A stretch of DNA of 64,000 bases from Styela clava (lineage: Eukaryota): positions 11,966,001 through 12,030,000 of the forward strand of contig NC_135264.1 in NCBI RefSeq assembly GCF_964204865.1, written 5' to 3'. Positions 3,201 through 56,100 of the stretch are shown here, in pieces (the stretch's first letter is position 1; each line of letters begins with the position of its first letter). Position numbers and translations under genes: made by a program. The notes beneath the pieces are model-generated. The model had not been told where the DNA came from. It was given only the letters and a program-made list of their open reading frames with translations, and searched no databases.

Positions 3201-6200
3201 GCATGGTTCTCGAGTACCTGATATGAAACCATATACAATAAACAGTGTTCATTATGATCCAGAAACGTATATTAGACATGAACTTTCTATGTTTTAACTT
3301 CTCTATTTCAATATATGATATTGTTCGTTCATCCGAAATAACCCCTTGGAATGTCATGATTTGTGTGAGTTTGCTCCGCACCAAATCCGCCACCACTAAG
3401 CCCACTAATTTTGTAAAATCAGCAAAATAGAGGAAAAAAATTTTTTTAGGCATTGATACTGCAATTGTTGATAATGGCTGATCATATCACCCTTTGAGCT
3501 GCATGATCAACCGTTGAGAGTCGTCCTCGATGTTTCAATATTTTTTTATCGTTTTTTTGTATCATGTTACCTTAATTCCTTCATTGATTCCACATCCTAT
3601 GCACGTACTATCAAAAGTACGGCTAGGTAACTTTGCTGCTAACTGTTTTCGATCTTCAGGTGTCTCTAGGTGTACCAACTCGCTTACTGTTACTGCATAT
3701 GTATGAAACGTTACTATTCCGACGTATGTGCCATTGGGCACATTGGTGATGAAATAATTTGCGGAAGTTGAGATTTGTTCCAACCGGGTCTGTAAAATAT
3801 TAATGCATATCGGAAAATAGAACTAAGAAAAGTAAATTAAACTATACTGACTGAATATATCAGGAACATGACTTACCTGACCACTACCATCGGTTGAGCC
3901 CATGCTCCCAGAAATATCCATTATCAGAACAAATCGGCGACTGCCTTCTGCGTGTTTAATATTAAATACGGGAGTTGTATCGAGGATGGAAACAGGATAA
4001 TTCCCAGTTATGAAGTCGTTCGATTCCATTATAACAGTCCATGTACTTTTTCTGTTGCACAGTCGGTTCTGATCATTTGGCGCATCGGCATTGTGGAAAT
4101 TTCGGCCGTTACCGTCTTCACAAAAAGACACGATCTAAAACATATTACTATGCGTTAATAAGGAATCGCATGTTTCTGCAAATGTATCTTATGAACTTGA
4201 GCAACAGAAAAAAAATTTTGATTTTTATAACCCAATATTCTTACCGGATCTATATATTGGTAGGACATTAGTGATGCATTAAACACTCCATCGGAGTCCG
4301 ATGCATAGCATATGCAGTCTTGTGTAAACAATCCCGTAGTCGGGTCCGTGTTACAGGCCGGTCTGTTAATCTCTGAATTCGTACATTTTAAAGTTAGATT
4401 TGGATCTTCTGTGCAGCAAATTCTGATTCCCCGCGCACATCTTAATAATATGATATTACGTTAGGGTCTGTGAGTGTTGTTAAATTTGCAAAATTCGCCT
4501 AAATCTTGGTTTTAAGCAGACACCGAGAGTTACTCTTGAGGACTACCGCAAGCATTAGCCCATATTCAATGAACAGTACGTTGATGAACTTACTGAGTTT
4601 TGGTTTGGCAATTATTATAATCTTGTGGGTCGCACAATACATTTGCATCATCATCAGGATCGATGTAAAATGGATCGGTTTCCGATGTTTCATCAAAAAC
4701 GCCCCATCTGTAGTGCGCCCATTCGTGTACTATCACTTTTTCTGTAAAAAACATTCTGGTCAAAGATATCTGGCACGAAATTTATATTCTTGAAGAAGAT
4801 AAAATTATGCATACAACGAAACCATTCATATGTCTAATTGTACAATTTTGTATATAGGCCTGCCCCACATATTTCAATTCATATGCTCAATTTCTGCCGA
4901 AGACTGAACTTTGCATTATTGCTTCAAATTGAGCAAATGCCAAAAAACAAACGTTTCAATTTTTATTTCATGTTTGTACAATCTACCTCTTGGTCCATAG
5001 TTTGTTATCATGCTATCATCCAGAAAATAATTTGGAGTGAAATGAATGTATGATCCAGGTTGTCCACAACCTCCCAATTGGAGTGTATATGGTGCATCTC
5101 CATAGCTCAGATTCTCTTTTGCAATTATAACATCGGCCTGTTCAAAACAAAAACACACATAAGTAATAGTGTTTGCTTCAGCATTTGACAAATCACTGAA
5201 CGTAGTTAGTACAAAATTAGTTATTATATATATTGCAGACTCATTCTCGCTCACAAAACGCTACTCACCCCCCCCCCCCATTTACACGTCACAGTAGAGC
5301 TAATCTATCGCCTGTAATTTCAATAAATTCATGCATTTGTCGTCCTAAATATATATAAATGTCGCCTAGAGCAGGGGTGTCAAACATGCGGCCCGCGGCC
5401 GCGAGCACTTCCAATGCGACCCTCAAACGCCTAACAATATTTCTAAAATTATGTGAGTTATTTGTTATCTAAATGTAATACATTTTTCAAACCTTTTAAA
5501 GTGAAATCGATTATTCACACAGATAAACACAATTTGCTGAAAATAGTTTTAGAAAATTAAATTTTTTTTTGTTTGGAATTGCAATGGGAGTTGCAATATT
5601 TCTACATTTCTTAAAATTCTAAATCACATTGTTTAATTTGTCACATTTCCATCAGTACAATGAAAGAATACAATATAAGTATAGACATTATCAGAATAAG
5701 CTCAGCAGTCAATATAACAATTTTAAAGATCAACTTTGAACAATTTTTTTTAATATGTTTGTATATTATCATAATTATAAGGCTACCTAGTTACTGAAAA
5801 TTTATATCAATAACTCAAGCGGTCCACGTATGCCACGTTATGGTAGGAAATGTGGAGGGAAATGTCTAGTCCAGGGGTGGGCAACCTTTTTCGGCTCGCG
5901 TGCCCAAATCGGCTAAATTTAACGACAAAATTCTTCCGCGTTCCAACCAAAATTAAAAACAATGCTTGTTACTTTTAAAGCAAACATACACAATAATAAA
6001 CCTTCTAAACATGTAATCTACAGACGGATTCACTATTCGGGAAAATATCAGCCTGACAAATAGATTTGATTACTTTTCTTATTCTATACAAGTGATGCTT
6101 CTTCTGCTGCATTACCGTTGATAAAGATTTACATTGGGATTATATTTTGTAACTTTCAAAGAATAATACAAACTACTGGTTATATTTCTTTTGAAATCAA

Positions 6201-8375
6201 TTTATTTCAGTAAGTTAGCAAGTAACTCTAACCAACATGAGCTGTACAACCGTAGTAGTATATATTTACGGTACAACCTCATAAATCAATCAGAAATGAA
6301 GAAAAAAAGTGGCACAGACGAACTCAATATTACGTAACAATGAACCCCCCCCAATGAATGCTGTGTCTCGTCACAATTCGTCGAGAGCTAACTCAGTTGT
6401 TACGTCATAATGTATTTCTTTGTATATGTCATGAAAAGACAAAAAGAGTTTAAAATTGTAAATGAATAACAGATTGTTAACAAACGATAATGAATAAACA
6501 AACACCGAGTTTCATCAGATAAATCAGAGCCTCGAAACTTTTTATCTGATAGAAAATGATCTCGTTTCTGAGGCCTCGCTCGCGTGCCGAATAAATGGGC
6601 TCGCGTGCCGAGTTTGGCACGCGTGCCAGGGGTTGCCCACCCCTGGTCTAGTCCGAAAAGGTAGTCATTTGTTTGTTTACTGATCTATACATGCAATGAT
6701 AAACGTAATATTTTGTATTACTGAAATTAATCAAACATTCTCAACGATCCAGAGTAACCTATGATCATATGACCTCGTCAATTAGAGTTGGTACTGTAAA
6801 ATCATTTCATTCTGATATTAGTAAGATGGTGGCACAAAAGAGATGCCAAACGTCAGGTCATATGTAATAAAAAAAAGTTTATTCTGTAGTATGTTTGTAA
6901 ATTTTAGGCTTATATATTGAGATTAAGTATTTTTTAGTGTATATATTATTCTTTCCTTATCAGAACTTTGTTCAAAAATGTTGTACATTAAAATTTATGA
7001 TTTTTTGTGATAAATATAGTAAATTGCAATAATATTGGAATGCAAAAATTAATATGTAAATTGCATTTGAAATTCGAGAAGATACCAAAACTTCATTCGG
7101 CTGTTCAATTGCGTCAAAATATATGCCACAAACTATACCTATATAAAAATATGCCTCAAGTATACATTGTCAAAATATATCAAAAACTATTTGCGGCCCT
7201 TTGCACAATTCCTAAAATGCAATGCGGCCCTCGAAAACCCACGAGCTTGACACCCCTGGCGTAGAGGGTCCTTATGGCATATTTTGCACAATAATTTATA
7301 AAAGTACTTGTCGCGTTAACGGGAGAATAAGCTGACATTTCCACGTTCTAAAAAAAGAAAAAAATCTAGCATTCTGGTTACTTTGTCATATGTCTCATTC
7401 CCAGCTAGTTCCGCAGATGAATATGTCCAATTGCTTGGCAGAAGAATTGTTACTTCGCCAATATATGCACGATTTTTGGTTGCTGTGAATAGCGCACTGG
7501 ATGCCTCTGTCCAAGATTCCTGTAATAGATAATATAGTTTCAATGAAGCGAAAGTTTTTGTGTCCAATGAATAAATAAACAAGAGAGCAATGCTCAAATA
7601 TATGGACACGAAGGCTAAAACGAAGTAGGACCAAATCTATCCCAGCACCGGTAGTCAGATCACTGAGATGTGATCACGGAACCACGGCTCGCAACATTTA
7701 ATTTTGATGGCCTCATGACACAAAACTTTGAAGTGAAAAAACAAATGAAATAGCCTACAAGCGACAACAGCAAGCTTTAACTACTTAAAATTTCAAAGCA
7801 ATTGGTCCAGTGAAGAAAAAAGCGATTTTTTCATGACAACCTAATATAGGCTATAACAAAACGATTCGTCCTCTGAGTCTCCAAAAATCAAAGCACAAAT
7901 ATATGATCACAAATTGGGTGACGTCATATGACCTTCACCAAGGAAAATTTTTGTCTAGCGTTTGAACATTGTTCATATACACTTTTGCATACAGAAATTA
8001 AATATGTCATAATGTCAACAATACGCGATTGCAATATATATAGGCATACATCAAATATGGTACACACAAACAATATAACGAAACGAAATAATATAATGTA
8101 CTTTGGTCTTACTGATTACGTCAATATATCAAATGTTTTCCTAGAATGTATTTTGCTGCTAAGTTGAAATGAATTACGAAATATTCACCAAACATTATCA
8201 AACACGTTCTTACTATTATTGAATCTATCAAGTCATGATCTTCGGATACACTTGGATTGATAGCTATGACAATTCCAGTATATTTGTTGTTCTCAAGTTT
8301 GACGATTCCTTCACCAAGTCTATAAAGCATCATAGAAATCACGCACATCCATATTTTCTTCATTTTTGTTTTCAT
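258..8375 (-). CDS. CLCA: CLCA-family zinc metalloprotease/VWA protein, paralog A (3' end continues beyond the left edge)
   Basis: Hand-spliced GT-AG exons: 8375-8214, 7519-7382, 5137-4987, 4741-4594, 4440-4245, 4134-3877, 3789-3571, 3217-3107, 2698-2519, 2152-1886, 1619-1464, 526-424, 337-258. Signal peptide followed by [17 protein letters not shown]; [23 protein letters not shown]; intact [14 protein letters not shown] (4727-4713); [13 protein letters not shown]; VWA DISGS and MTDG; LYDNGA and [12 protein letters not shown]. Confidence 0.93.
710..1378 (-). mobile_element. 3' part of a tRNA-derived SINE, split by a foldback MITE
   Basis: Reverse complement matches the 3' half of the SINE at 42697-43025 (gccgccgtag..ggttcac, tccatgcttccgaaaa, actaatccca, aatatgtaaatcctat). 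Confidence 0.65.
827..1278. mobile_element. Foldback MITE with ~140-bp imperfect inverted arms and 8-bp TSD
   Basis: Ends gggtctc...gagaccc; arms pair over about 140 nt; gggattag on both flanks (819-826, 1279-1286). Confidence 0.8.
5372..7258. mobile_element. Non-autonomous hAT (Charlie/Buster-like) element, outer
   Basis: TIRs caggggtgtcaa...ttgacacccctg; 8-bp TSD gcctagag/gcgtagag (7/8 match). Confidence 0.85.
5872..6645. mobile_element. Non-autonomous hAT (Charlie/Buster-like) element nested in the previous one
   Basis: TIRs caggggtgggcaacc...ggttgcccacccctg; perfect 8-bp TSD gtctagtc (5864-5871, 6646-6653). Confidence 0.9.
7578..7830 (+). mobile_element. Partial copy of the Helentron/DINE-like family found at 58453
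   Basis: Shares aacaagagagc.atgctcaaatatatggacacg and aaatttcaaagcaattggtccagt..aaaagcgattttt with 58453-58650. Confidence 0.65.
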
Positions 8376-10346
8376 ATATATGTTAAATTTTTTTTCTCAA
8401 TATTCTAAAATCAAATGTTGTTCACGTTGAAAACATACTAGCTGAGAAAAAAGCTCTTGAATGCAACATATGCTAATGATTTGGTTTCTGCGAGACTAAC
8501 TACTAATCTTCTACGCTTTTGTGCCGATGGATCCGTATGCATAAAATGCAATGATGCTGTAGCAAAAGTAAAGGTAACTATCCTAAGTCAATCCAACATA
8601 CTTGCTAAATTTCAACGAGCTTCCTTTTCTAAATTATTTTATATGAATGAAGAAGACTTTGGTTCATGGGCGATCATGATTAGTATATAAGAACTAAATC
8701 ATCAGTGCAACATAGTAGTATCTATTCTTATTTGTTTATTCTTGAATGAAAACGTCACCGATCACTATAAAGCAGTGGGCTATATTCATGATATATTATA
8801 ATATATATACTGACAGAACGAGTTTTTATCAACTTAGTGAATTAAGGTTGCATTTATTCACATGAGAATTACCTCACTCATCGGAATGCTAAACTTTCAA
8901 CTGACAAAATCCTTCTACTTTTCAGAGTAGCGAAATTACAGCTGCATTAATAACGATTCAGAGTTATCGTCCAAATCTGACCTTTTTATTCAATTGTCTA
9001 TTTCTGTTTGAATCAAAACTAATTGGTGTTGCAACTTTTGTTCTCCTACGTAGTGTGCATAACTGGTATATAACATTTCATGCCTTTCATTTTCAAAGTT
9101 GTACTTGGAATCTATCTATCACATAATAGCCCTAAATATTAGAGCACACCTGTATAATCTATGAACTCGTATAGTAGTTCCGACTCCTTTCTAATAAAAA
9201 AGTATCTAGACGAAGTCTTCTGGCAATTTTGTTTGAATTTGGATTAAATAGAAAAACATCATATTCCACGGGACAATATCGGGGAACGATATACGGAAAT
9301 GCAAACTTTAAAGTGAAAGTTTGCCATCAAACAACAACGAAATTCCATTTTTTCAAAAGAGGGGTAAGTAAACGCAAGCCCCGATTTAGTTTTTTTTATT
9401 TGAAATTAATAATTAGCATGTTTACACATATAAATAGAGCAAAGCTGTGCAAACATTAGGGTTCATTTACGAGTCCATTTTCAAATCGTTTTCTTTATTC
9501 TGAAATAAAAAAATTAATTGAAGGATAACATTTTTATCCAAATGTGGTTTTCCAAGGAATTCAACTATTAAATCTTGCAGCATTCGAAATTTTACCATCA
9601 ATACTTTTATTAAACGCATTGTCCACATAGAACTCGACATACAGAAGAGCACTGACCTGGTCTTAGAAAGCAAACGTATTATTTGTTTACTCAACGGATA
9701 CTGCTTGAAACTCACCTCAGCCGCGTTCGCCTTCCCGGTCGTATATCATATATATATATATCGCCAAACAATAAAGCAAGGGTTGGGGGTCATCGTGTCC
9801 ACATCATGACTAAGAAAAATCTAATATCAAATGCTCGAAACTGTTGTTAGTCATCAACAAAGCATGTCTGAACGGAGTGTATTTCGCTTCGAGGTAGCAT
9901 CGCAACCGATTTACAAGCGCCATATTTTGACAAATATAGGTTGGAAAATAAATAATTGACCGATCGAGTATTGCGCCATTTTTTTAACACATATATACTT
10001 ATTCGCTCTTATCATTTTGCCATTAGAATGAGCAATGGAAATATTTTTGAGTATTCAAAATGATGTGTTGTCACACAGCAAACAAACTTAGACAAGTTTC
10101 ATTTTAAATGTTTAATTCAAATACACAAACCCAGAATACCACAGAATAGTATGGACAGAATCAATTCGATAAAAGAGTTGGGGTTAGAAAAAATCAATTT
10201 ATCGTTCTAGTTTGAAAAAAGACAACTATTTATCACAAGCAATTATCGAATTATTTTGTAGGGAATATTAGTTATTTGGATAACATTTATTACTACATAT
10301 AAATGCATCTTTTCAGTATATCAATTATATGAATAGTTGAAAAGAT

Positions 10347-13300
10347 ATGTGGAGTTCTCGACTACCAGTGGTAGTCTTATTTTTTCTTTTCCGTTCTTTT
10401 GTCGGATCAACAAATGTGAAATTAGAGAATAATGGATACAAAGGATTACTAATTGCTATTCATCCTACCGTTCCGGAAAGTTCAGCATTGATTCAGGAAA
10501 TAACTGTGAGTTATTGATAGAATGTCTTCCTATAAAATCTGTTAGATTAGAAAAATGGTGTATGTAAACAAATTTGACTTTAAGATTAATGTTTTTTTTC
10601 ACAGAAAATGTATATTTTTGTTCATTAGGACGCATGGACAAGCGCATCAGAAGCTTTATACAAAGCAACTAAACATCGCGCGTATTTCAATATCATTACA
10701 ATACTGGTGCCGGCAACATGGACCAAAACTTCTTATCCTATATCAACAGAAGAGACTTACAGCGAGGTAATATGATACATTCAAATCTCTTTCCTTAGTT
10801 ATATTTTGTTGTTGGTATAATTCGTCAACAAGATTTTTATCGCTTGATTCCGGCACGCTTTGCAGCCGATCCACAAGCTTATGCCTTATGTAATGCCCTC
10901 TTTCGTATATGAATTTGTGTTTTATTGCTATTTGCTGTTATGTTTAATTGCATACATGTGTCACAACCATCTTTTCAGGCCGATGTAGTGATTGAAAGCG
11001 GTTCCATATCAGCCCCTTTCACGGAACAATACGGAAGTGCATGTGGCGAGCCAGGAAGCAAAATCCATACCAGATATAACTACTATACTGACGATGACGC
11101 TGTTACAAATTTCGGTCAAAGAGGTAAATTGTAACTATAAATGATAAGGACATAGATTTTTTTAGGCTTTTTTATTCTGAACCCAAGAAAAGACAAAAGA
11201 CGATGGTACATATAGGCCGGTCTATTTGAAAACAAATGCGAGCCTGAAAGTATTAATCTAACCCTTTTCAAGTCAATTAAATAGCTTTTATTAATCTTAG
11301 CAGAAGGATTTGTCTTTTCTGCAAACTTGATAATAGTGGCCGAGATATTTAAGTACTTTTGGTCTGGTTCAAATTTTCCCTGAATAAAGTTTTAAAATTT
11401 TTGATTTTAATAACAAAACCAAATGTAAAATAGAAAGTAAAAGTAGTGCGTTTTACATTCAAGTAATTTTTAATTCCAGGTAAAGCTATTGTTCAACAAT
11501 GGGCACATTACCGATATGGCATATACGACGAGACTTCAACAGAGTATACGAAGCAAAATGGAGAACATCAAGCATCAAGGCAAATAGAATAACTTTCCTA
11601 TACATATACAGTAATTGAAATTGAAAGTGGTTAAAATTAACTAAATTTATAGTCATAGTTTTTGTGCTTCAACTCTTTTGTGTGTCTGGTGTCATAGAAA
11701 AGTAACTAAGTATATTACGATGGTACTGAACACTGAAAATTTGGGGCTCCATAAGTGTGTGCACCAATATAGATAACTAATTTTGTTTGCCTATACTTTA
11801 CATCAAGTTGTGTAAAGAGACTGAAATCTATGGGCCACTTGACTAACACAGACAGCCCCTGAACTTGTAATAGAACTAAAATAGAAAAATCGGAATCAAA
11901 TTATACCAAATCCTAACCTGGTAAACATACTACGTGGGTACCAAATATTTAACAGGGAAATCAGAAAGAAACCTGTTTGCTTCAAAGTGTTTGTGCTCTG
12001 GTGTTGGGTGTAGAATACACGCTTAATTTTTGTTTGAAAAATTAAGGTGTCCAGAATCTGTCAGTGGATTAGTTGTCAATGTTGAGAACACTGCTACGAC
12101 TTGTGCGTTTGATGAAAATACCAATACTTACACAGATGATCAGTGTGTTTTTTTACCACAAGAAAATACAGCTGGAGTTAGCACCACTCTTTCGTGTTAC
12201 CAGTATTTGGACAATGTAAATATTTTACATATTTTCAACTTATAATACTCTAAATTTTCTTTACATTCACATTTTTTGCACCTGCACCTTTGAAGTTGGA
12301 AAAAATAAACAGATAAATAAGAAATATTGTCGCAACTACCAGGACGCGTTCCTCTAGTTTATTTGATCATTTGTTTCCTTGGTAATAGCGCACCTATAAA
12401 AACTACACTGAACTCAATATCGTGTGATTTGATTAATGATGTCATTCAATAGAGATATTCTTCACAATTGCCCGATCCCCAGCAGTAAAACTTTTTATGC
12501 ACGCGCAACTATGGTGCTATAAAAAAATTATTCACATTCTAAATGGAACACATTCCAGATAAAAGCCCCAACAGTTTATGACACTCGTATAAAGTTATAA
12601 CAGAATGTAATCCACGTGATAAGATACGTCATTTTTAGGCATGGTTGGCAAGGGTCAAAGGTGACTATATCACACTATTCAGCTTTGTAATTATCGAACT
12701 CGGAATGAGGACATACTTTGAAATACAAAACTATGTTCGCTTTACTATTTTGGGCAATTATTTATCAAGTTAACAATATACACTACGTTAGTTGAATTTG
12801 ACAGTAAATATTCTTTATATTTAGGTTGTCACATTCTGTCACGACCAGGACCCAACCAATCCGAACGGTCCTAACGTCCATAATTCAAATGCAAAGAATG
12901 AACAAAATCGACTTTGTGACAGAAAAAGTTCTTGGTATCACATTTTACAACATGACGATTTCGTGAAAGGGAGTAATCTAGCAAATGATAGCATTACTGA
13001 CCTAACGCCCTCGTTCAATTTTGTCAAAATGGAAGAACATCCAAGATATGTTCTCATTATAGATGTCTCAAACAGCATGAAGGGGGTAAGACCTGAATGT
13101 TATACGACACCATTTGAAATAAATGATAAAAATATTAAAAGAGAAAGTACTAACGACACTAAGCATTTTTCCTTTTTCCCTTTGAGTAAATTATTTTTGC
13201 TAGAATATCTTGTTGCATGAAACTAATACTATCATGGTATCATCTCACATAATATCTCATCACAAAATTCCGTTGCTTTTTATTTTTAGCTCAGATTACA

Positions 13301-16300
13301 AACGTTCAGAACAGCAGCAAGAGAAATGATAATGAATTATCTACCATCAGGAAGTCGAATAGGAATTGTCGAGTTTTCTTCAAACGCTGATATATTGAGC
13401 TATCTGAAAACTATAGAAACTCAAAATGATCGTGAAGATTTTGTGAATTTGCTTCCCACCATTACTCAAGATTTCACAAGCATTGGAGATGGATTGCTTA
13501 AAGGAATTGAAGTAATTATAACACACGTTGAAATTCGCTCCCTTAATTTCTCAAATATAGATACTTGTTTGAATGACGGGGTTTTCTAGTAACTGATCGT
13601 ATTTTGATGAAAAGTATCATGATTTAGTTTCAGATTTATTGAATTTTCAGTCGAAAAATGAATAGTAGAAATATTTTAAGTTGTGACAAGATATATTTAG
13701 CGTCTTTTTGATAAGTACATTTTTAAATGGCTCAATCCAGCAGTGTGTAGTATATTGTTTGATTCAATTAGCAATTACGTAATCATTACCTAACAGGTTT
13801 TGGAGTATGGAGGTGAAAGCGCTGCAGGAGGAAATCTTATAGTCTTAGTTGATGGGAAAGAAAATGAACCGAATTTCGTCGACATGATGTTTGATAGCAT
13901 CGTAGGAAAGGTATACACATTATTTGGAAATCCCGACTTCACCATTGTTATGCGTTGCATTATTCCTAGGAAATTGTAAAACGAGCGCGTGAAATGAAAT
14001 TTCAACGGTGCTTCTTACTTGGAAATCAATGTTTACATTCAACTCGTGACTACATTTACCTTTTCTGCGTTCGTTTACATGACCTTATGGCTTATTGAGT
14101 ACTTTCAAAATTGTGGACAATGAAAGCTTTTTTGGTCTGGTTACCAAGTAACATTTGGTTTGGTTGCCGAATTTAACATTTTTTGGATGCATCAAATTTT
14201 ATTACCTATAGAACTTTTTTGCACAAAAATTTACATGACATTTCCAGGGAGTTCATGTCAGTACAATATATTATGATGAAACCGATGGAGGAAGAGAAAA
14301 AGGACTTCAACAACTTATAACAGAAACTGGTGGAAAATGGGTTTTTGTTGCCGACGAAAACGATTTAAATTCTTTGACAAACGCTTTTATTACAATGGTC
14401 CAACCAGAAGATGGTGATACTACAGCACAAGTTCTTACTGTAAAAATTTGATTATTGAAGATTATACCGTTTATAATAAAAATGAAAGCTTTCAAAAGAA
14501 GACGTACAAACCCAAACACTCATTCGATTATTCGAAAAAACACTTAAGATTTGCCAATAGCAAGCATATGGCCTAATCAATAACAATTTACATGTTACTA
14601 TATACTGAGTATGGCCTATTTTTCGTCGATTTTTGACTGTGTTCACAAATCTTCGTAGGAATACGACATACGTTGGAATACGACATGGGTATATTGAACC
14701 CTAAACTTCACAAATAATATTTGAATTTCAGATCGAAAGTTATGAGGTGAGCATACCATCAGGAGCATATCAATCATCTGTATATTTGGATCAAACAATT
14801 GGAAAGAATACTGTTTTTTCATTTTCTTGGAATTCTGGCAACCCAGATTTGAGCGTAAGACTTCAAAGCCCAGATGGTTGCGAGTTCACCCATTCAAGCA
14901 TTGGACCAACTTCGAATTGTGGAAATACCGTGAGCTCAGAAGCCAAGGGATTTAATACAATATCGTTCAATATTTCTGGTATTGCGAAGGTAATAATTAC
15001 TACACATTAAAAAACAGGTTGCTCTACTTTTCAGATTGTATTAAAGCAAATGGTATCCCATGGATTGCGACGTCTATTTACCTGCCAGACATTTTTCAGT
15101 GATCTGAATAATAAAAAATTGGGATCGAATAAAAAAAAGTAGTTTTCGATTCAGTATATAATTATTGTATGTATGAAAACGACAATTTAATCATGTAACC
15201 ATACAAATTTGAGTCGCTTTGGAATTTGTTAAAAAATATTTGCCCCGTACAATAAATGCTTTTAGTCCCTATTAAAACCAAGTATTCGAAGAATAACACT
15301 ACTTAATGACAGGAAGGAAACTGGAAATACATCATAGAACCATCCTTTGGTTCAAAGGTCAATATTCAAATATCATCTTCAGCAGCGGATCAAGATGTTG
15401 AACCAATAATGATAACGCCATTCCTAACAACATCAGAATCTAGTTCTGTAAAGGTACTGCGGGCGAAAGTAAGTGTTCATATTTTTACAATCCTTTAATT
15501 GAAGTCAATAGCTATTGTAAGTTTGTAACTTAATCACTGATTGCCGCATCACAATTTTCAGGTTTCAAAAGGGTTGCTACCTATTGCTGGGGTGAATGTT
15601 GTAGCAAAAATTTCAAAACCAGATAAAAGTGTTGTCACTATTGATCTTCTCGATAACGGAGCGGGTATGAGTAATTTCTATGGTGCTGTCTAATATATAC
15701 TGCGTCACTGAAAGTCGAATTGTTCTTGAAATTCCTTACTAAAATATTCAACTGAGAGACTCATGTCGAATGGTAAAATGGATGTGTCTTGAGAAAACAA
15801 CACGACAATCCACATTCTTCAGAATTCTGTTCTTTTTCACGTTTTTGACACAATACACTTCGATTGGCAACACTCTTTTTATTACAATAATATACCATTT
15901 GCTGAGTATCACAGTTATAGTGAATCTTTTAAGGGGCGGATCAAAAAATGGATGATGGAATATATTCAAAGTCTTTGACGGATATTACAACCATCAACGG
16001 TCGATATAGTGTAAAGGTAGTAAATATTTGGTTATAATGAATATAAATGAATTTGAAGGATATTTATACCATGTTATTCGCTTCCTGTCACATATTTTAA
16101 TTTTGAATATTAGGCCTCAGTCTGTTTGACGTTTTTCTATCGTTTTCAATTGAGGGAAGAATATATGTAAAATGTTGTCGCAAAACTCAATAATTTTTAA
16201 TATTTTTTCATATATCTAGATTGAGGCAACTGCATCAGGCACATCTGCCAAAATAAACGGAAACACGATGTCCTTTGCAAATTACAACTATGGTGTTGTC

Positions 16301-19300
16301 CTTGACGATGGTATGGCAAATTCGATATTTCACAAACATTTAGAATAAGAATTAGGCTTTATTAAAATAAGATTTGAAGCAGAAAATGCATGAATGAATT
16401 AGTTTCAGCATTGAAATCATTGCGTGTCCGGAAAACTCGCCGCATGATATTTCGCCGTAAGGGCATTTCGCTGTAAAACAAGTATTTGTGATAAAAAGAC
16501 AGTGAGGTTTATAGTGTTAGGGTATGCTCTTAAATAACGAATCTTTTCTAAATATAAAGGTACTTCAAAAACCTAACTGTTTCATTACAAATACTTGTTT
16601 CACAGCAAACTGCTCTTGCGGCGAAATTTCATGCGGCGAATTTTGCCAGAACCAAAATCATTGAGTCTCACAATCTGGTATCGTCATTAATCAATAAAAG
16701 CAAAATTTATAATGACAATTTGGTGCGGTATGCAGATGGTATGGTGCGGTAACGTTACTCATAAATTGAATATAAGAAATCATCGTTTCCCAATCATTTA
16801 GGTTCTGTGAAGTTGAATCCAAACGGCTTGCCAGATTCAGTAGAATCAAACAGTATTTCTGTTACTGAATTTAGTAGATCTCTCTCGATGGTCGGCTTCA
16901 CTCATTCTGGGTAAATATGGATAAAAAATATTCTAGTTGAAACCATTGCGAATCGTATTGATAGAATAATTTCACCCGAAAAGAAAATTGAAAAATTCAA
17001 AGATGAAGTGCTCTCACACCTTATTCAGCTTATAGCAATTAGTGTTTCTGGTTTCGACTGGTTAATTATAGTTTCGTAATAATAATTATTCATATTTTTT
17101 ACTTATATTAGTTTATATCATTTGTAGCGCATCCGGAGGACCAGATAATATATCGCCATGTAAAATTATTGATCTCGAAATCAAACAAGCAACCGAATCC
17201 ACAAACAAAATCGACATTTTATTTACTGCTCCGGGAAACGACTACGACGTAGGAAATGGTGGGTCTTGTATTATGATCAAAAATTCCAATTGAATAAAAT
17301 GCAAATTGAGTACTGTAAGTTCGAGGGTGACCACAAACTAATATTATTTTAGCATGTTATTTATTCCAAGCTGTAACTACTTTTGCGATGGGAAAAATAC
17401 AATATTAAAACGTTTTTATTTCAGCTTTTTATTATGAAATGTTTTACACATTCGAAGCATCCACCGATTTGCTTAATCTCGGTCAGTCGAGAAATGAAAC
17501 AACACGTGTGGTTTTAGAGGATGATTTCTTACAAGGAAGTTTGAAAAGTCCTAAAAAGTTTGGAGAGATTGAAACTATGAGATTGGCGCTTGTGTCTGTG
17601 CCTACTATAGAAGGATTTTACACGTAGGTTCTCATCGTGGTTAGTTTTATTGCTTTGTTTGCATTATGTGCATGTTACCCGCCCATAGTTTGCTACATAT
17701 TTGCTACGCTGCAAAGTCAAGTTACGAAGACAGAATACGAGAGAAAATAAGTACGTGACTCATGTGCGGTTCCATTCTTACCTTTTTCTTGGAACTAAAG
17801 TTGCTACATATTGTACGTTGCAAAGTCAAATGCGAACGAATGTAGGCTTATAGGGAGAGATTAGTAATTATCCGTGTTCCCACTAAAGCTATATTTAGGA
17901 CACCCATCCTAAACGCCTACGTGAATTCAAGCTGCGAATATTGAATACGAGAGAAAATAAGTACTTGCTTAACTGGCGCTCTTGTGCGAATCCATTCTTA
18001 CCTTTTTCTTGGAACTAAGTTAAACAAACAAATGCAAACAAGTGCTTTTTGCAGAGTCAGCTTAGTTGTGCGATCAGCGGACTTAGAAGGCAATGTATCG
18101 CCGATATCTAATATTGCGGCTACTGAATATGTCGTAGGTAAACCAGTAGTGATAGCAACATCGACCAATTCAGTATTTTCAACCTCCATCAAAGTAACAC
18201 CAGTATCAAAATCTACGTCGATACCGAGTAAACCAGAACCATCAAGTGAGTTTAAATTCATATAAATTTGGTTACTATTAGTATATTTTTTTAGACACAA
18301 AACTAGGATTATCAGTGGATGTGAGGTGTAATTTCTGTTTATCTTTTGTGAATCTTAAATATTCCAAATCAAGGATTTTATGAAGAAAATTTTTGCATCA
18401 CATGGAATCCTGTCTCACGCTAATCCTATTTGTCTTCAATATCAAGGACAATTAGTAGCTTTGGGGTCGAAGACAAGCTAAAGCTAATGATAAATCTGTC
18501 TGTGATAAGTCAGAGGTCGATGACCAGAAAGTTCATTTGTCATTCATCAAACGTCACAAGGCGAAGAAGACAAAATTGTCAACTATACTAATGAATTTTA
18601 AATAGAGCAAAGTGAAACTAGCTAATCAAAGTCAGTAAGATCACGTATTATTCATGAACAAACAGACGGTTTTGAAAACTTTTGAAACTAAATAGCGTGA
18701 TGTATATTGCAAAATATGCCTATAGGGTAAGGCAAAGTTCAAAACTAGTATGTTACTGCATCGATGACGACACTATTGAAGTGAATGAATGGAAGATATG
18801 AATAAAATTATGTAGAGCGTTTGTACCTTATGTTTTGATTAGTACATCGCGCGAGTTACATTAGAATTTTCTATATTTACCCTGGAGTTTTGAAGCAGTA
18901 TTACTAATCCATACCTGTTAGTTAAAAACTCACCTTTGCTAGGAAAGATTTTACACTCAAATTATTTTTAACAGATGGACTTATCATTGGACTTTCTGTT
19001 TCGATTGTAATAATTGTCATTTCCGGTAAGTAATTAAATGTTTCTTCATTCGAACTACTGACTAAATATAATATATTATTTAATATGTATATTAATTCTA
19101 GTATTTGGGGCGAATAAGTTGAGCTCATATATTATCAGAACCTAATAAATAGTCTATATGAGGCATTACTGAATCATGGGGTATCGTAGCACCATGTGAA
19201 TGTTCTTGTTTTTTCCGACTCGGAACCTCATGTGTTTAGTTCTTCTTCATATTATACATGTTTATATTCAGTTGTAGCGGTGTTATTATGGTTATGTAAA

Positions 19301-19597
19301 CGACACAACCGTAAAAAGGCAGTCAGTCCAAGGGAGAGGGTCTATCAACCAAGCGAATACGACAAGGCCACGGATCTCCCTCGTGAGTGCCCACCGGATT
19401 ATTCGACAGTCAATGCACCTTATCAACAACCTTCTTACAGGTATGAAGCATACCAACGACAACCTTATTATCAAACAAATGATTACGAATTCGCCCAAAC
19501 AAACCAATCTGCCTATGAAACTCCCATACAACAGCAATATTACGAAGATGTCGATAATGCCCCGCCGCTTCCTCCTCGTCCACCAAACCGTGGGTGA
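10347..19597 (+). CDS. CLCA: CLCA-family paralog B: membrane-anchored, HEXXH degenerate (QQWAH), long Tyr/Pro-rich cytoplasmic tail
   Basis: 20 exons: 10347-10505, 10629-10766, 10979-11123, 11480-11579 (GC donor), 12047-12215, 12825-13085, 13290-13511, 13797-13910, 14248-14439, 14732-14989, 15313-15468, 15562-15664, 15934-16016, 16220-16310, 16802-16910, 17128-17258, 17425-17623, 18055-18245, 18975-19025, 19272-19597. Frame is open throughout. Motifs: VKLENNGYKGLLIAIHP, VQQWAHYRYGIYDE, DVSNS (MIDAS), LLDNGAGAD..DDGIYS, FTAPGNDYDVG, TM segment GLIIGLSVSIVIIVISVVAVLLWLC then KRHNRKK. Confidence 0.92.
16423..16654. mobile_element. MITE with ~85-bp TIRs and 9-bp TSD
   Basis: Left arm (tcgccgcatga.atttcgccg...aaacaagtatttgt) pairs with the right arm; aaatcattg on both flanks (16414-16422, 16655-16663). 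Confidence 0.8.
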
Positions 19598-26800: not shown

Positions 26801-29450
26801 ATTGGTTCATTTATTTCTACATCAGTAAGAGTATTTCCATTAACATCGTCATAAAATGGGTCAGATTCACTTGTTTCGTCGAAAACTCCCCATCTGTAAT
26901 GCGCCCACTCGTGAACAATGACTTTACCTGAACATTAATTTGGAAATCAGATAAAAGCGATTTAAAATTTCAACATTATTGCTGAGGTATATACAGGTGC
27001 AGTGAATATTAAACCTAAATTTGATGATATTTTTGCTGGTGCGTTTTTTTCACAAAATTTAATGTTTTAAAAATTTATTATCAAAACATTTGAAATTCTA
27101 TGTGAAAATTTTTTAATAAAAATTCACGTTTTTATAGTTTTTCACTCAATTACTTCTGAATATCGCCATGTTATTTCTCAGTAATTTATAGTACCCTCCT
27201 GGAGAATAATTTAAATTATGCATTGTGCGTAGATAACAATTTAAATTTCAAGTTACAATGGGATTTTCCATGCCCTAACATATATCGAATTAACATATTT
27301 TAGCCTTAAAATTTATTCAATCAAGTAAGTACTATTCAGGATAATAAGCAAAAAATTATAACCATGTATTATCTTGAAATGTAGAATTTACCTCGCTTCC
27401 CGAAGTTCATAACCATATCTTCATTGACAAAATAATTTGGTGTAAAATGAATGTATGAACCTGGCGATCTACACCCGCCATACTGGACAGTGTAAGGTGC
27501 ATCTCCGTAGCTTGGATTCGGGTTTGTAACGATGACATCGGCCTACAAAAGGCAAAAATTTAGGTTGTTGTATTAGGTACCGGTAGTATAGATTCCAGTT
27601 CTCACTTATGATTTATTAATTCCACTGTAAATATAAGGTTTTGAGATATAAAATGTTAAAACGCGTTACAAATAATCAATCTCACAAATTTCAAGGGGAC
27701 CACCAGAAGTATGTGCACTAAGATGGCGCACAACCTGAACATAGTATGCGTACCAAATTAAGGTTCAGGTTGTGCGCCATCTTGGTGCACATACTTCGGG
27801 AGCGCCTTTCAAGGTAAACAACATGGTGGGCAAGATTTGTCACGAATACAAATAACACCAAGTGATACAAATGGCAGATATAAGTGCAGTGTGATATTTC
27901 AACACAGAATCGTATGTGTTCACTGTCATAAAAATGAAAGATTTAAATTTCATCAGACAATAGGAGGTGATATTTGTTCAAACATCTTTGGCAAATGATC
28001 ATTGAAGTATGATGCATTATTGAACGTACTTTAAAATACAATCCACCGATAGCTTTTCATCAGTGAGCTAGATCTTCTTTTTATTTAATATGTCATAAAA
28101 TGAACTCTTCGCAATATCTCACCGCATCATATGTTTCTCCCTCTGCTCTCTTTGATTCGATATAACCAGTCCATGTACTCGGTACAAGAATAGTTATTTC
28201 TCGAAAATAAGCCCGCCTTTTTGTTGCAACAAAAAGTGACTCCGAAGCTTCTATCCACGATTCCTAAAGCAAAAATTGCTTTTAAAAATAATTAAACGAT
28301 TTAAAAATTTATATTCTTCGTTGAATGTAAATGAGAACCCTTTTCTTTCACTGTTCAACGTCATATTTATGGTACCTAACTCAAAACATGATGTAGTGCG
28401 AAACTCAAAACATATGCATTTCAGTTCAGGGTATATGTCGTGTCATTGCCATCATAGTGACGTGTGTTTGTATTCATTACCATCAAAAGCAGAATATACA
28501 AGACTTACTATTCTTATCAAATAAAATTTTTTATTCCTATTTATTAACATGTATATCGCAACAAGTTTATACCAAAACTACTTTAAATTACATTAAAAAA
28601 CATTCCCATAGCATTATAGTCGTGCGTGGGAATATATTGAGGCATTTTAATATATTACATTGAATGATTAAACTCAAATACTTGGCTAATCTAGAAGGTT
28701 ATTATCCATAAAGCCTCCCAAATATAACAGGATAAAATATCCAATGTGCAGCATTGGTTTATAAAAGTTGTTTAAGCAAGACAAAGATATACATTTCAGG
28801 TTAGCAAACAGTCGGCTATATTCGCAAAATATGTTTTTGCCTCATGTACGTTTTCTCACAGCAAGGTGTAAAGCTCACATGTCAGTGGAAAGATTACTAA
28901 TACAAAAACATAGTTTAACTACCATTTGACAAAGATGCCAGTAGATATATATAGGTTAACACTGGACTTGCTGTATAGATGATAAATTGAATGAATCGGC
29001 ATCAAATCAAACAACTTGATCTCTTCAATTTTGTCTACCTTTATCGTCTAGCTAATTTCAAAATGTAGCGTTTTGGCAACTACGAATCTCCAGTTTAGAT
29101 TCAGAGTTGGATACAAACAAACCATTCAACAAGTGAACTAAGTGGCACAAACAAATCAAATCTATAGCCTATTTAGTAATTGCTTTTATGGAGAAGAATA
29201 GCAACTAAAATTACTCTAAACGAATTGTTTTCAATCGAATATCATTTTGATGCTCTACTATCCTAAATACCCTTCCTACCTTTATTTTGTCTATAAGATC
29301 GTTGCTTTCTGGTACTCGTGGGTTAATAGCAATAACCATTCCAGTATATTTATTATCTTTTAAAACAACTCTTGATTTTGAAATTTCGGCTTTTACACAG
29401 GAATTCCATGTCAATAACAGCGATAGAGACAACCACAATGTACACTTCAT
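20894..29450 (-). CDS. CLCA: CLCA-family paralog C, membrane-anchored, catalytic motif intact
   Basis: 19 exons: 29450-29280, 28263-28123, 27542-27392, 26927-26786, 26605-26422, 26339-26085, 26006-25773, 25608-25489, 25326-25147, 24653-24390, 23740-23585, 23408-23303, 23118-23039, 22967-22877, 22806-22677, 22512-22382, 22099-21916, 21405-21242, 21033-20894. [13 protein letters not shown] (26913-26899), [22 protein letters not shown] segment [24 protein letters not shown], Lys-rich tail. Confidence 0.93.
22171..22373 (+). mobile_element. 'gtacatttgaaccc' MITE family, copy 1
   Basis: Ends ggtgaccgtacatttgaaccc...gggttcaaatgtaatggaacc; 9-bp TSD tatattacc (22162-22170, 22374-22382). Confidence 0.9.
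23852..24280. mobile_element. Non-autonomous hAT element
   Basis: TIRs caggactactcgact...agttgagtagccctg; perfect 8-bp TSD cactagta. Confidence 0.87.
27697..27806. mobile_element. Small hairpin MITE (~110 bp)
   Basis: gaagtatgtgcactaagatggcgcacaacctgaac pairs with gttcaggttgtgcgccatcttggtgcacatacttc; tttcaagg on both flanks. Confidence 0.8.
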
Positions 29451-53190: not shown

Positions 53191-56100
53191 ATGGATTTTT
53201 TGTGCATACTCCTGTATTTACTGCTGAATTGGGGATATTTTTCTAATGCTGAAATTTCGAAATCGAATGTTATTCTGAAAGACAACAAGTATGACGGAAT
53301 TGTGATCGCCATCAATCCACATGTACCTGAAAGCAACGAGCTTATCGACAGCATCAAAGTATGTACGCAGTTGACATTGATTTTTCCTGCAATACAGTGG
53401 AATTTAATGTTAAAATTTGGTGAATTTAAAATAATAGGACACATAATAGGACTTATGTAATTTCTCTCTATATATACTATAGCTATGGGTGTGGAATCGT
53501 AATTAGGCGTATATTTCTAAAGCTATTTAGAATTTACTTATACTCGGTGTCAAAATTTCAACCCTATCCAATATCGAGATTGAATGTCTACATTTTCAAC
53601 TAAAACTGCAAAATGCTCATCAGCACTTACATTTCCGTATTAAATATTTCTTGAAGTCGGATGAAAATATCTCATCACACATTCTTCTATTACTAGTATG
53701 TTAAACTAAATTCGAAAGCAGGTGCACGACATTTCCCCATGTGTTACCTTACAAAATATCCTAAATACTTGCTTATTTTGTGATACCTTCAGGAATCGTG
53801 GAAGCAAGCGTCCACTATTTTGTTTTCTGCCACAAAACAACGAGCTTACATTGGTGAAATAACTATTCTTGTACCAAGCAATTGGACCAAATATAAAGAG
53901 ACAGCAACAGTGTCCGACGGCGAAACATATGACAAAGTAAGCGAAACTTTCATTAAAAGCTGGTAAATTCAATAAATCAATTTAAACGACAAATTTCACT
54001 TAACTTAAGATATATAATAATATCCGTAAAAGTTTTGTCGACAAACGAGAAGTTCTGCCATCATTATGTGTTGCCCACCCACCCATTTTGCGTCGTAGCT
54101 ATATAAGACTTTGTGCCGTGTATTTTCCCCACCTACAATCATCATTATCTCAGGCTGATGTCATCATTGCCAAACCAAATCCAAGCTACGGAGACGCCCC
54201 TTATACTCTTCAATATGGAGGATGTGAATCACCCGGCTCTTATATTCATTTTACACCAAATTATTTTCTGGACGAACATATGGTAACGAACTTTGGAAAA
54301 AGAGGTTTGAATTTAAATTTTTCAGCATTTTTGCGGATACATTTATTAAGTTTTCTAAAATTTCATTCCACTCATCCCTTAAAATTTTTGTTGACGCCTG
54401 CCAAAATTTAATAGTACGTCGCGAGTCATGACATCTTGAATAGAGTCACATCTGCCTTACTGCATAGATGCATGGATGGACGCTAATAGTGTTCTAAGAT
54501 TAGAAATACCTAGGGTTCTATTACACCAAATTTCCATCACTTAACCACTTTTATTGGCGTGTATATATCGACTAATATAATATTCTAACTACAGAAACAT
54601 ATATGTTAGAAAGCATTTAGGGATAAAGCTGTGGACGATTTCACTTTTCAAGGATAATATCGTTGAATTTTCTAGGCAAAGCAATTGTTCACGAATGGGC
54701 CCATTATAGATGGGGAATTTTTGATGAAACATCGGAGGCTAATCCATTCTATGATGATGTTGATGGAAATTCTTTATATGACGATAATACAGGCCAATAT
54801 CTAAATTCAGCCACGCAGTAAGTCTTGTTATTATCCAAATGACTTTAAAAGCACATAACGTCGAAATATTTGAAAATAAAATCATATTTGAATCGAATGA
54901 AATAGTAAATTATTTCATTTTTGTTTAAGATATTGAAAAAAAGTAAAAAATATCCCTTACTTTATTATTGTACCGTGTTTTACCTGTTACTCGAATCAAT
55001 GACTTATTTATAGTTTACTAATTGGCAACCGACCAGAATACTGATGGCGAAGTACGGCCCTTATATATGAATCTTGGGCCTGGTTGTGGTGACCAGCCTA
55101 AAATGAATAGCTGCTGGCGGTATTATATTACATTTTATGGCAATGCATTTGACTCGTGTAAATTAGCTCTTACCAAATCTATCTATCAATCGTGTGGTAT
55201 CAACAATATTTCTAATGATGTAACGGTGCCTCGATGATTCGCATCGCCGATATTTTATAAGTCCTCTCTGCCTTTTTGTTACGTACAATTGTTTCACTGT
55301 TTCATTACCGCAGGGCTGAGGGTTCTTGTCGAAAACCAACCCAAATTTCCATAGTGGTAATAAAACGAGGGAAGCGACACGATACTATTCCTATCGCCTA
55401 CACAACTTTCATAAGACCATAACGTGCGTCGTAGTTAGTCTCCGTATTTTTGATACTTCTATCTCTTATTACAGAGAATTCAGTCTGACAGCAGCCCTTG
55501 TTATTTGGTAAATTGCTTTCAAAGGCCATGTTCTTTCCCATCTTTAGAAAAGTTATTATTTAAAAAAGTACATTACAAACGAAGTGAAGGAGTTCTGAAA
55601 TTGTTTTCGTAACAGGTGTCCAAAAGATTTCAGGGTATGTTGTGTTGAAAACACAAACCAAGAATGTAGATTGGGTACATCCAGTTGTCAAATTGAAAAT
55701 GGGCTTTATACAGAAGATTGTATTTGCTATCTAGGAAATTCAGATGTAAGATACAATACATCCTTGATGTCTTACCAATATCACGAAGAGGTATTTTGTG
55801 TTTGAATTTTACTCTATCTGTTGTCTTTTTGTAGTATATATATTTCCGTAGATTGCAAATATTATTATATATATATACATATGTTCAGATTGTTGAATTT
55901 TGTGATGAAACTAATCATAATATGAACGCGCCAAACCAGCAGAACCGGTTGTGTGGCCTAAGAAGTGTGTGGGATGTTATTGAAGAGTCCGTTGATTTTC
56001 AAGGAAATAAAAATCCACCTACTGAAGCTTCCAACAAAGTTGATCCAATTTTCAGTGTGAAAATTGCGCAAGACTCCCAGCGATTTGTTCTCGTACTCGA

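What the first reader, a model, noticed from the sequence alone, without database searches (positions are those of the whole stretch)
11494..11508. HEXXH zinc motif replaced by QQWAH in CLCA-B
Codons CAA CAA TGG GCA CAT give QQWAH where the three paralogs have HEWAH (4727-4713, 26913-26899, 54690-54704). Both the first zinc-binding His and the catalytic Glu are replaced. E-to-Q at this position is the standard inactivating mutation in human CLCA1 (E157Q). The neighbouring WAHYR.G..DE is kept, suggesting the fold is retained without activity. Two separate substitutions make a single sequencing error unlikely.
Basis: partly seen in the sequence, partly recalled or inferred. Interest (0 to 1): 0.8.

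Follow-up and report, generated by a model that had tools for sequence, protein, structure and literature searches.

The report
Catalytically dead CLCA paralog, sea squirt
One of four neighbouring CLCA-type protease genes in the sea squirt Styela clava has lost the residues it needs to cut proteins, yet it is still transcribed, spliced and kept by selection; such dead CLCA copies were already described in 2013.

Summary
Window 11494-11508 reads CAA CAA TGG GCA CAT (QQWAH) in exon 4 of a CLCA-like gene (B, + strand, 10347-19597). Paralogs A, C and D read HEWAH at the stated coordinates. The genome is Styela clava.

Gene B is not a wreck. RNA-like contigs from another sample splice 11 of its introns precisely. 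The listed differences between that sample and the assembly are 14 synonymous and 14 non-synonymous (pN/pS about 0.28).

B has also lost the Met-turn methionine (Met to Ser, 12192-12194). It keeps His160, Gly164, Asp167, Glu168, the Cys/His ligands of the second zinc site, the VWA MIDAS residues, a cleavage-loop homolog and a membrane anchor.

Best reading: a functional, catalytically inactive, membrane-anchored CLCA pseudoprotease.

This is a new member of a known kind. Lenart et al. 2013 reported that only 72% of CLCA_N domains carry HExxH and inferred at least five independent losses. Here 15 of 93 representative homologs are substituted, and a second dead copy (RQWAK) lies on another chromosome.

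Caveats:
- The two amino-acid changes come from two adjacent nucleotides.
- The RNA-like contig has two unplaced differences in this exon.
- No ortholog was found.
- The spliced protein was not joined, searched or folded.

The parts
10347..19597 (+). CLCA-like gene B. Signal peptide, metallohydrolase-like domain, VWA, beta-sheet-rich region, cleavage-loop homolog, FnIII-like region, TM helix, cytoplasmic tail.
   Evidence: ATG at 10347 and exons 1-2 read. Exons 2-13 are joined by spliced X5 contigs. 3' exons are placed by homology to the gene C protein P0151 and by open frames only. Stop at 19595-19597 (ORF 19190-19594).
11480..11579 (+). Exon 4, the catalytic-motif exon. Peptide: (G)KAIVQQWAHYRYGIYDETSTEYTKQNGEHQAS(R).
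   Evidence: X5 joints 11121>11478 and 11576>12044, resolved to AG|11480 and 11579|GC. Pfam CLCA positions 128-153, 18.6 bits, below the 25.6 cut-off for this 35-aa piece.
11494..11508 (+). QQWAH in place of HEWAH. His156-equivalent is Gln (CAA), Glu157-equivalent is Gln (CAA), His160-equivalent is kept (CAT).
11518..11532 (+). Retained Gly-turn and third zinc ligand: G-I-Y-D-E (Gly164, Asp167 and Glu168 equivalents).
   Evidence: Ligand roles are taken from passages of bioRxiv 10.1101/2025.10.18.683246.
11580..12046 (+). Intron 4, with GC-AG ends. It contains a high-copy repeat at about 11679-12072.
12047..12215 (+). Exon 5. It keeps the Cys187-equivalent (first codon after the split codon) and other framework cysteines.
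   Evidence: X5 record 11 covers 12044-12215 with a single difference (12142).
12192..12194 (+). Met-turn position: Ser (TCG) where 71 of 74 canonical and 14 of 14 substituted homologs have Met (B reads TLSCYQY against SLMSYQY).
   Evidence: The X5 RNA-like contig is identical here, because the one difference of that piece is at 12142.
12825..13085 (+). Exon 6: end of the metallohydrolase domain (Cys250 and His255 equivalents kept) and start of the VWA domain.
13062..13076 (+). VWA MIDAS motif D-V-S-N-S (DxSxS kept).
13290..13910 (+). Exons 7 and 8 (13290-13511, 13797-13910): rest of the VWA domain, with the MIDAS Thr (FTSIG) and Asp (VDGKE).
   Evidence: Pfam VWA PF00092 27.8 bits, above the 23.8 cut-off. 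Also.
16220..16345 (+). Open frame holding the homolog of the self-cleavage/inhibitory loop: ...NTMSF|ANYNYGVV. The P1' Ala is kept (16277-16279). P1 is Phe (16274-16276) instead of Lys/Arg/Thr. No R-x-[KR]-R site.
   Evidence: Exon ends are not RNA-verified.
4713..4727 (-). HEWAH of paralog A.
26899..26913 (-). HEWAH of paralog C (protein P0151 = XP_039257971.2).
54690..54704 (+). HEWAH of paralog D.

Best explanation
Gene B is a functional, catalytically inactive member of the CLCA family in Styela clava. It is a type-I membrane protein whose metzincin-like domain has lost one catalytic-zinc ligand (His to Gln), the general base (Glu to Gln) and the Met-turn methionine (Met to Ser). The rest of the fold is kept.

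Shown here:
- the substitutions;
- transcription and correct splicing;
- purifying selection;
- retention of the Cys framework, the second-zinc ligands, the MIDAS residues and the cleavage-loop homolog.

Inferred:
- B cannot cleave itself.
- It acts through binding (VWA MIDAS, ectodomain), not hydrolysis.
- It either stays uncleaved at the cell surface or is cut in trans by an active CLCA, as wild-type human CLCA2 cuts its E165Q mutant.
For: Motif and paralogs.

Transcription and splicing: 11 GT/GC..AG joints in X5 contigs across exons 2-13, with near-zero X5 depth in several intron bins.

Frames: every RNA-supported exon has an open frame that continues the paralog alignment.

Selection: 28 listed X5-versus-window differences fall in exons 3-12, 14 synonymous and 14 non-synonymous, over 374 synonymous and 1339 non-synonymous sites. 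pN/pS is 0.28. The binomial p is 0.0009 against the neutral share of 0.218, and 0.02 against a share of 0.30.

Met-turn loss. The X5 contig is identical there.

Retained residues: His160, Gly164, Asp167, Glu168, Cys187, Cys250 and His255 equivalents, and MIDAS D, S, S, T, D.

Published effect of E-to-Q, and trans-cleavage of the dead mutant: passages read in PMC3861482 and PMC10669480.

Substituted-site CLCAs as a known class: PMC3650047 passages.
Against: No enzyme assay exists.

Gln could in principle still contact a metal, and His160 and Asp167 remain.

The X5 run is labelled RNA only as a guess; splicing is my argument that it is RNA.

Two of the three X5 differences in the motif exon are not placed. 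X5 has one unlisted C>G and three unlisted A>C somewhere in the 5.9 kb laid. An HE allele in that sample is therefore not formally excluded.

pN/pS rests on listed differences only. At least four differences are unlisted.

No ortholog with the same motif was found, so the age and conservation of the loss are unknown.

No protein of gene B turned up in the protein collections.

3' exon boundaries beyond 16200 are by homology only.
Confidence: 0.75

Rival explanations
1. B is a decaying, non-functional gene copy that merely still looks intact and is still transcribed.
For: B is the most divergent of the four window copies, at 30-49% identity to D per exon outside the 20-aa motif hit, where A and C mostly reach 40-80%. 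It has a long branch in the exon-6 tree, 0.98 against a median of 0.35. It departs at several near-invariant columns: Met-turn, A-P-N to A-K-N, W-x-V to W-x-H. No protein for it was found in the collections searched.
Against: Frames are open in all 12 RNA-supported exons, and frame-compatible splice pairs exist for all later junctions. Splicing is precise. pN/pS is 0.28. Framework Cys, second-zinc ligands and MIDAS are conserved. The divergence from the paralogs is old, yet there are no stops.
Confidence: 0.08
2. The QQ reading is an assembly or sequence error, or only one allele, and other Styela clava haplotypes carry HE.
For: Both amino-acid changes come from two adjacent bases (11496-11497). 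The only clearly different sample (X5) has two unplaced differences in this 103-nt piece. X1 may be the assembly's own sample. The species is very polymorphic: an older database version of gene A's protein, P0157, differs from the window's gene A at 6 of the first 40 residues.
Against: The X1 contig covers 926 bases with 0 differences. The surrounding exon is divergent at many other codons (W to Y, V to I, F to Y). The Met-turn Met is also lost, and this is confirmed in X5. There is no second copy or haplotig in the assembly. A>I RNA editing cannot turn CAA into a His or Glu codon (genetic code).
Confidence: 0.05
3. B is still a protease that uses a non-canonical site, with the remaining His160 and Asp167 plus Gln or water.
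For: His160, Asp167 and Glu168, the Gly-turn and the cleavage-loop homolog with its P1' Ala are kept.
Against: E-to-Q alone abolishes cleavage in CLCA1 and CLCA2. Here the first His and the Met-turn Met are gone as well.
Confidence: 0.04

Closest known systems
CLCA_N proteins with substituted HExxH sites (Lenart, Dudkiewicz, Grynberg and Pawlowski 2013, PMC3650047; passages read)
   Same: A CLCA_N homolog in which the critical His/Glu/His positions are replaced. E to Q and H to Q are among the typical single-nucleotide replacements the paper lists. The loss is lineage-specific and sits beside active paralogs.
   Different: This Styela clava gene is not named in the passages I read ('Ciona' and 'tunicate' each occur 0 times in the main text; supplements were not seen). 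New here are evidence of splicing and purifying selection, the extra loss of the Met-turn Met, and the position inside a tandem array of active copies.
Human CLCA2 (type I membrane CLCA) and its engineered E165Q mutant (PMC10669480; abstract and passages read)
   Same: Same domain order with a C-terminal TM helix and cytoplasmic tail. The E-to-Q mutant is uncleaved on its own, is cleaved in trans by the wild type, and associates with it.
   Different: CLCA2 is naturally active. B is naturally dead, lacks the first His and the Met-turn Met as well, and has Phe rather than a basic residue at the aligned P1.
Human CLCA1 E157Q (PMC3861482) and the CLCA1 cryo-EM description (bioRxiv 10.1101/2025.10.18.683246; passages read)
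   Same: Same motif frame, HEXXHXXXGXXDE. The residue roles (H156, H160 and D167 on zinc; E157 as base; M238 in the Met-turn; E168, C187, C250 and H255 at the second zinc) map onto B through the alignment.
   Different: CLCA1 is secreted and active. The mapping used non-human mammalian homologs from the database, not the structure itself. The PDB copy held only the VWA domain, 6PYO.
Second dead CLCA of the same genome (C10:17451xxx, locus L011; earlier scan finding s1-829417)
   Same: A CLCA-like gene with the motif substituted (RQWAK), WG-x-x-DE kept and a DxSxS MIDAS kept.
   Different: It lies on another chromosome and is far more divergent. It carries a basic R-K-S-R-K-R-R stretch in the linker after the GRY-x-VKV motif. 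B has no R-x-[KR]-R site in the three translated linker-region segments scanned (15936-16019, 16220-16345, 16765-16911).
Catalytically inactive ADAM family members (as cited in PMC3650047)
   Same: Membrane-anchored metzincin-type ectodomains with HQxxH or LQxxL sites that act without proteolysis.
   Different: A different metzincin family with a different domain set. The analogy is functional only.

Membership tests
CLCA family (Pfam CLCA_N PF08434 plus VWA) | N-terminal CLCA_N (metallohydrolase) domain homology | tested here: met
   Exon pieces hit PF08434 at 18.6 and 20.7 bits, each below the 25.6 whole-protein cut-off because they are single exons. tblastn with the annotated Styela clava CLCA protein P0151 aligns along the B locus, from 7e-12 at best to non-significant for several short exons (motif exon 6e-5, Met-turn exon E = 1.0). 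Exon 6 alone finds 150 CLCA-type proteins at E<=0.001.
CLCA family (Pfam CLCA_N PF08434 plus VWA) | VWA domain with MIDAS following the N-terminal domain | tested here: met
   PF00092 27.8 bits, above the 23.8 cut-off, on exon 7. D-x-S-x-S, Thr and Asp are kept.
CLCA family (Pfam CLCA_N PF08434 plus VWA) | Cleavage loop about 700 residues in, followed by an FnIII-like domain | tested here: inconclusive
   A homolog of the loop is present (NTMSF|ANYNYG against QQSK|AVYNRGY in gene C and RQQQNK|ALYIPGY in mammals). Whether it is cut cannot be told from sequence.
Active metzincin-type CLCA protease | HExxH: two zinc-binding His and the general-base Glu | tested here: not met
   QQWAH. Only the second His remains.
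Active metzincin-type CLCA protease | Third zinc ligand Asp in G-x-x-D-E | tested here: met
   G-I-Y-D-E at 11518-11532.
Active metzincin-type CLCA protease | Met-turn methionine (Met238 of CLCA1) | tested here: not met
   Ser (TCG, 12192-12194). Met is present in 71 of 74 canonical and 14 of 14 substituted homologs.
Active metzincin-type CLCA protease | Zinc-dependent self-cleavage | not testable with these tools
   Needs expression and immunoblot.
Pseudopeptidase: inactive homolog kept for a non-catalytic role | Catalytic residues replaced in an otherwise conserved fold | tested here: met
   The fold itself was not modelled, because the joined protein was left out.
Pseudopeptidase: inactive homolog kept for a non-catalytic role | Gene expressed and under purifying selection | tested here: met
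   Spliced contigs in X5. pN/pS 0.28 on the 28 listed differences.
Pseudopeptidase: inactive homolog kept for a non-catalytic role | Substitution conserved in orthologs | tested here: inconclusive
   No ortholog carrying the motif region was found.

The most novel reading that the evidence does not exclude
B is not just a dead copy. It would be the dedicated non-catalytic partner of the active CLCA proteases encoded on either side of it. As a membrane-anchored substrate, decoy or sensor, its conserved cleavage loop (P1' Ala kept) would be cut in trans by A, C or D. That cut would release its MIDAS-competent ectodomain and leave a stub with a long cytoplasmic tail that signals. This would be a genomically linked protease/pseudoprotease module in a chordate.
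Probability: 0.12. Interest if true: 0.5.

Novelty: new member of a known kind. Interest (0 to 1): 0.25.

Why it matters
It gives a natural, expressed and selected equivalent of the laboratory E157Q/E165Q mutants, in an invertebrate chordate and next to active paralogs. That makes it a convenient system for two questions: what CLCA ectodomains do without proteolysis, and whether trans-cleavage between family members is physiological. It also shows that a CLCA can shed the Met-turn as well as the HExxH residues while keeping the second-zinc ligands and MIDAS.

The general phenomenon has been in print since 2013 and is frequent in the family, so a specialist would not be surprised.

Tried and rejected
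Sequencing error in an otherwise HE-type exon: rejected. The exon and gene are divergent throughout, and the X1 contig is identical.

Alternative exon supplying HExxH: none found in the B locus by tblastn with D exon peptides or with the gene C protein at E<=10.

Haplotig or second copy: none.

RNA editing as a rescue: rejected from the genetic code.

Recent duplicate of a neighbour: rejected. In the exon-6 tree the A/C/D/fifth-gene/C9a clade excludes B with 95/84 support.

Clavelina protein P0010 as a B ortholog: rejected. Its N-terminus resembles B's, but it groups with the Clavelina paralogs.

Searches that led nowhere:
- PDB searches with exons 4 and 5 gave only chance hits. With P0151 the PDB copy gave only the VWA domain, 6PYO.
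- The search for homologous proteins with the exon-3 open frame found no candidate.
- A metagenome scan for the motif stretch found 0 matches.
- A paper search for Styela clava plus CLCA found 0 papers.
- The pseudopeptidase review PMC11266112 showed 0 occurrences of 'CLCA' in the search listing; I did not read it.
- Hi-C raw reads (X10) gave no depth over the motif, and X8 (another organism label) did not cover it.

Not done:
- Supplements of PMC3650047 (trees, tables) were not seen and may list tunicate sequences.
Full report
WHAT IS THERE

The window is G000:C19:11966001-12030000 of a 377-Mb genome. The genome is Styela clava. The database protein P0151 (XP_039257971.2, 'calcium-activated chloride channel regulator 3A-1-like [Styela clava]') lies on a contig of 18,707,400 bases, which is the length of C19. 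Its motif stretch matches window gene C.

Open frames and tblastn show four CLCA-like genes in the window:
- A, - strand, about 8396 down to about 400
- B, + strand, 10347-19597
- C, - strand, about 29546 down to about 21200
- D, + strand, from 53128

A fifth copy lies just beyond the window end.

THE OBSERVATION

Window 11494-11508 reads CAA CAA TGG GCA CAT, which is QQWAH.

Compared with CAC GAA in A and D, B differs at two adjacent bases, 11496-11497. One tandem event could therefore explain both amino-acid changes.

The QQ reading nevertheless sits in an exon that differs from the paralogs at many other codons (YRYGIYDE against YRWGVFDE). The gene as a whole is only 30-49% identical to D per exon.

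No second E4-like exon exists in the locus. No second copy exists in the assembly.

Run X1 is DNA contigs and may be the assembly's own sample. It matches 10878-11803 with 0 differences.

Run X5 comes from another sample and study and is labelled RNA only as a guess. Its contigs skip 11 introns at GT..AG boundaries, or GC..AG after exon 4. Its depth is near zero in several intron bins. I therefore take X5 to be RNA, and conclude that B is transcribed and correctly spliced.

The RNA-supported exons are:
- 10979-11123
- 11480-11579
- 12047-12215
- 12825-13085
- 13290-13511
- 13797-13910
- 14248-14439
- 14732-14989
- 15313-15468
- 15562-15664
- an exon starting at 15934

The end of exon 2 at 10766 is also supported. 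Each exon has an open frame that continues the family alignment. Exon 1 (10347-10505) encodes a signal-peptide-like start.

Limits of the read evidence:
- The X5 piece over the motif exon (11478-11580) has 3 differences, of which only 11526 (synonymous) is listed.
- No X5-only difference nearer than 31 letters to a piece end was listed anywhere. The QQ codons are 17-22 letters from the piece start.
- By the table of change kinds, X5 has one unlisted C>G and three unlisted A>C somewhere in the stretch.
- X5 therefore does not prove CAA CAA in that sample.
- X10 (Hi-C raw reads) gave no depth over the motif, and X8 did not cover it.

SELECTION

Of the 28 listed X5-versus-window differences in exons 3-12, 14 are synonymous and 14 are non-synonymous. 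The exons hold 374 synonymous and 1339 non-synonymous sites, which gives pN/pS 0.28. The binomial p is 0.0009 against the neutral share of 0.218, and 0.02 if the share is set to 0.30. At least four differences are unlisted, so the figure is approximate.

Frame-compatible splice pairs exist for every later junction. Those 3' exons rest on homology only.

THE ACTIVE SITE

The roles of the residues come from passages of bioRxiv 10.1101/2025.10.18.683246:
- His156, His160 and Asp167 hold the catalytic zinc.
- Glu157 is the general base.
- Met238 forms the Met-turn.
- Glu168, Cys187, Cys250 and His255 hold a second zinc.
- The self-cleavage site is Gly694|Ala695, in a loop that occludes the site.

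I mapped these residues through a non-human mammalian homolog, P0224. In that protein, residues 187, 238, 250 and 255 are C, M, C and H.

B has Gln, Gln and Ser at the His156, Glu157 and Met238 positions. It keeps His160, Gly164, Asp167, Glu168, Cys187, Cys250 and His255.

The Met-turn Met is present in 71 of 74 canonical and 14 of 14 substituted homologs in the alignment of 88, so B is more thoroughly remodelled than most dead relatives. The X5 contig over exon 5 has a single difference, at 12142, so the Ser codon at 12192-12194 is confirmed in that sample.

The VWA MIDAS residues D, S, S, T and D are kept.

The cleavage-loop homolog reads NTMSF|ANYNYGVV. Gene C reads QQSK|AVYNRGY and mammals read RQQQNK|ALYIPGY. 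The P1' Ala is kept, P1 is Phe, and there is no furin-type site.

A TM-like stretch and a long tail close the protein. I did not analyse the tail further.

HOW IT MOST LIKELY WORKS

E-to-Q alone stops cleavage in CLCA1 and in CLCA2 (passages read). B lacks two more site elements, so I take it to be catalytically dead.

It is expressed and constrained, so it has a non-catalytic role. That role probably runs through the VWA/MIDAS domain and the rest of the ectodomain.

Wild-type CLCA2 cleaves its E165Q mutant in trans and co-precipitates with it, and the mutant depresses store-operated calcium entry below control. By analogy, B could be cut by active neighbours or could act as a non-cleavable partner or decoy. 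These last steps are inference.

HOW COMMON THIS IS

In this genome I examined 12 motif exons. Ten are HEW[AG]H and two are substituted: B, and a copy on C10 that reads RQWAK.

The C10 copy is a divergent CLCA-like gene with a DxSxS MIDAS and a basic R-K-S-R-K-R-R stretch in its linker. It matches the earlier scan finding s1-829417.

B's own motif exon fell below the genome scan's threshold, so the count of dead copies is a lower bound.

Among the 150 best representative proteins found with exon 6, my pattern found the motif region in 93. The other 57 were mostly fragments or lacked the region. Of the 93, 78 read HE..H and 15 are substituted: HEWAK twice, HHWGH, HNWAH, QQWDR, HQWAR, REWGH, KEWAK, HNWAQ, QEWAK, YEWGQ, HQWAH, MEWAR, AQHMP and TYGPA. 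One more substituted protein, P0043, was seen by eye. Named examples come from Daphnia, Lottia, a hagfish and a spider.

The 113 new proteins found with the active gene C protein were canonical in 112 cases. One had no recognisable region. That set is biased towards active-type relatives.

COMPARISON WITH PRINT

Lenart et al. 2013 (PMC3650047, passages read) state three relevant things. First, 72% of CLCA_N domains possess HExxH. [quoted passage not shown] Third, the site was lost 'most likely independently five times'. They list E to Q and H to Q among the typical single-nucleotide replacements.

The phenomenon is therefore known. No paper in the library holds both 'Styela clava' and 'CLCA'.

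ORIGIN OF B

A tree on exon 6 alone (35 rows, 84 columns) places A, C, D, the fifth gene and a C9 copy in one clade with 95/84 support, and that clade excludes B. B is an unresolved long branch, 0.98 against a median of 0.35. B is therefore not a recent copy of its neighbours.

Its nearest relative is a 93-aa fragment from an unnamed Logan assembly, 56-59% identical.

VERDICT

The finding is a new member of a known kind, of modest interest.

Structure modelling of the site is therefore left open.

Noticed in passing
L011 (G000:C10:17450000-17459999), motif at about 1107-1337, basic stretch at about 8618: A second catalytically substituted CLCA-like gene on another chromosome. The motif reads RQWAK-LRWGVYDE, DISSSM MIDAS is kept, and R-K-S-R-K-R-R lies in the linker after GRYNVKV. 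It matches earlier scan finding s1-829417.
   Followed up: partly
window 11679-12072 (intron 4 of gene B): A high-copy repeat. Summed depth reaches thousands to tens of thousands in all four runs, including the run labelled as another organism (X8), with many loose ends. Probably a transposable element family.
   Followed up: no
window 11580-12046: Intron 4 of gene B has GC-AG ends, supported by one X5 contig with 25 letters on the short side.
   Followed up: partly
window 58340-58900 (inside gene D's span): Internal direct repeats of about 200 bases (58455-58574 against 58653-58772, 90% at protein level). Asn- and Leu-run open frames lie on the two strands.
   Followed up: no
window 8124-8396 (- strand, first exon of gene A) against P0157: An older database version of gene A's protein (P0157, UniRef/nr, Styela clava) differs from the window's translation at 6 of the first 40 residues. 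X5 differs from the window by about 2-3% in B exons. Together these suggest very high haplotype divergence in this species.
   Followed up: no
window 32600-37200 (+), 40000-41800 (+), 45300-50900 (both strands): Between genes C and D, open frames look like a multi-pass transporter, a Cys-rich extracellular protein, and EF-hand proteins of calmodulin or light-chain type. This was read from translations only and not searched.
   Followed up: no
proteins P0036, P0055, P0106, P0091, P0072, P0070, P0141: Several substituted-site CLCA homologs share a distinct signature, [HQKM][EQ]WA[KR]...GV[FY]EE.G[YH][PTS]G. P0091 is from Daphnia and P0072 from Lottia. This hints at one or more old, conserved pseudoprotease subfamilies.
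   Followed up: no
window 15933-16021 and 16220-16345: In the aligned self-cleavage loop the predicted-active Styela copies read K|A, T|A and R|A, while B reads F|A. The P1' Ala and the following Tyr are conserved in all.
   Followed up: partly
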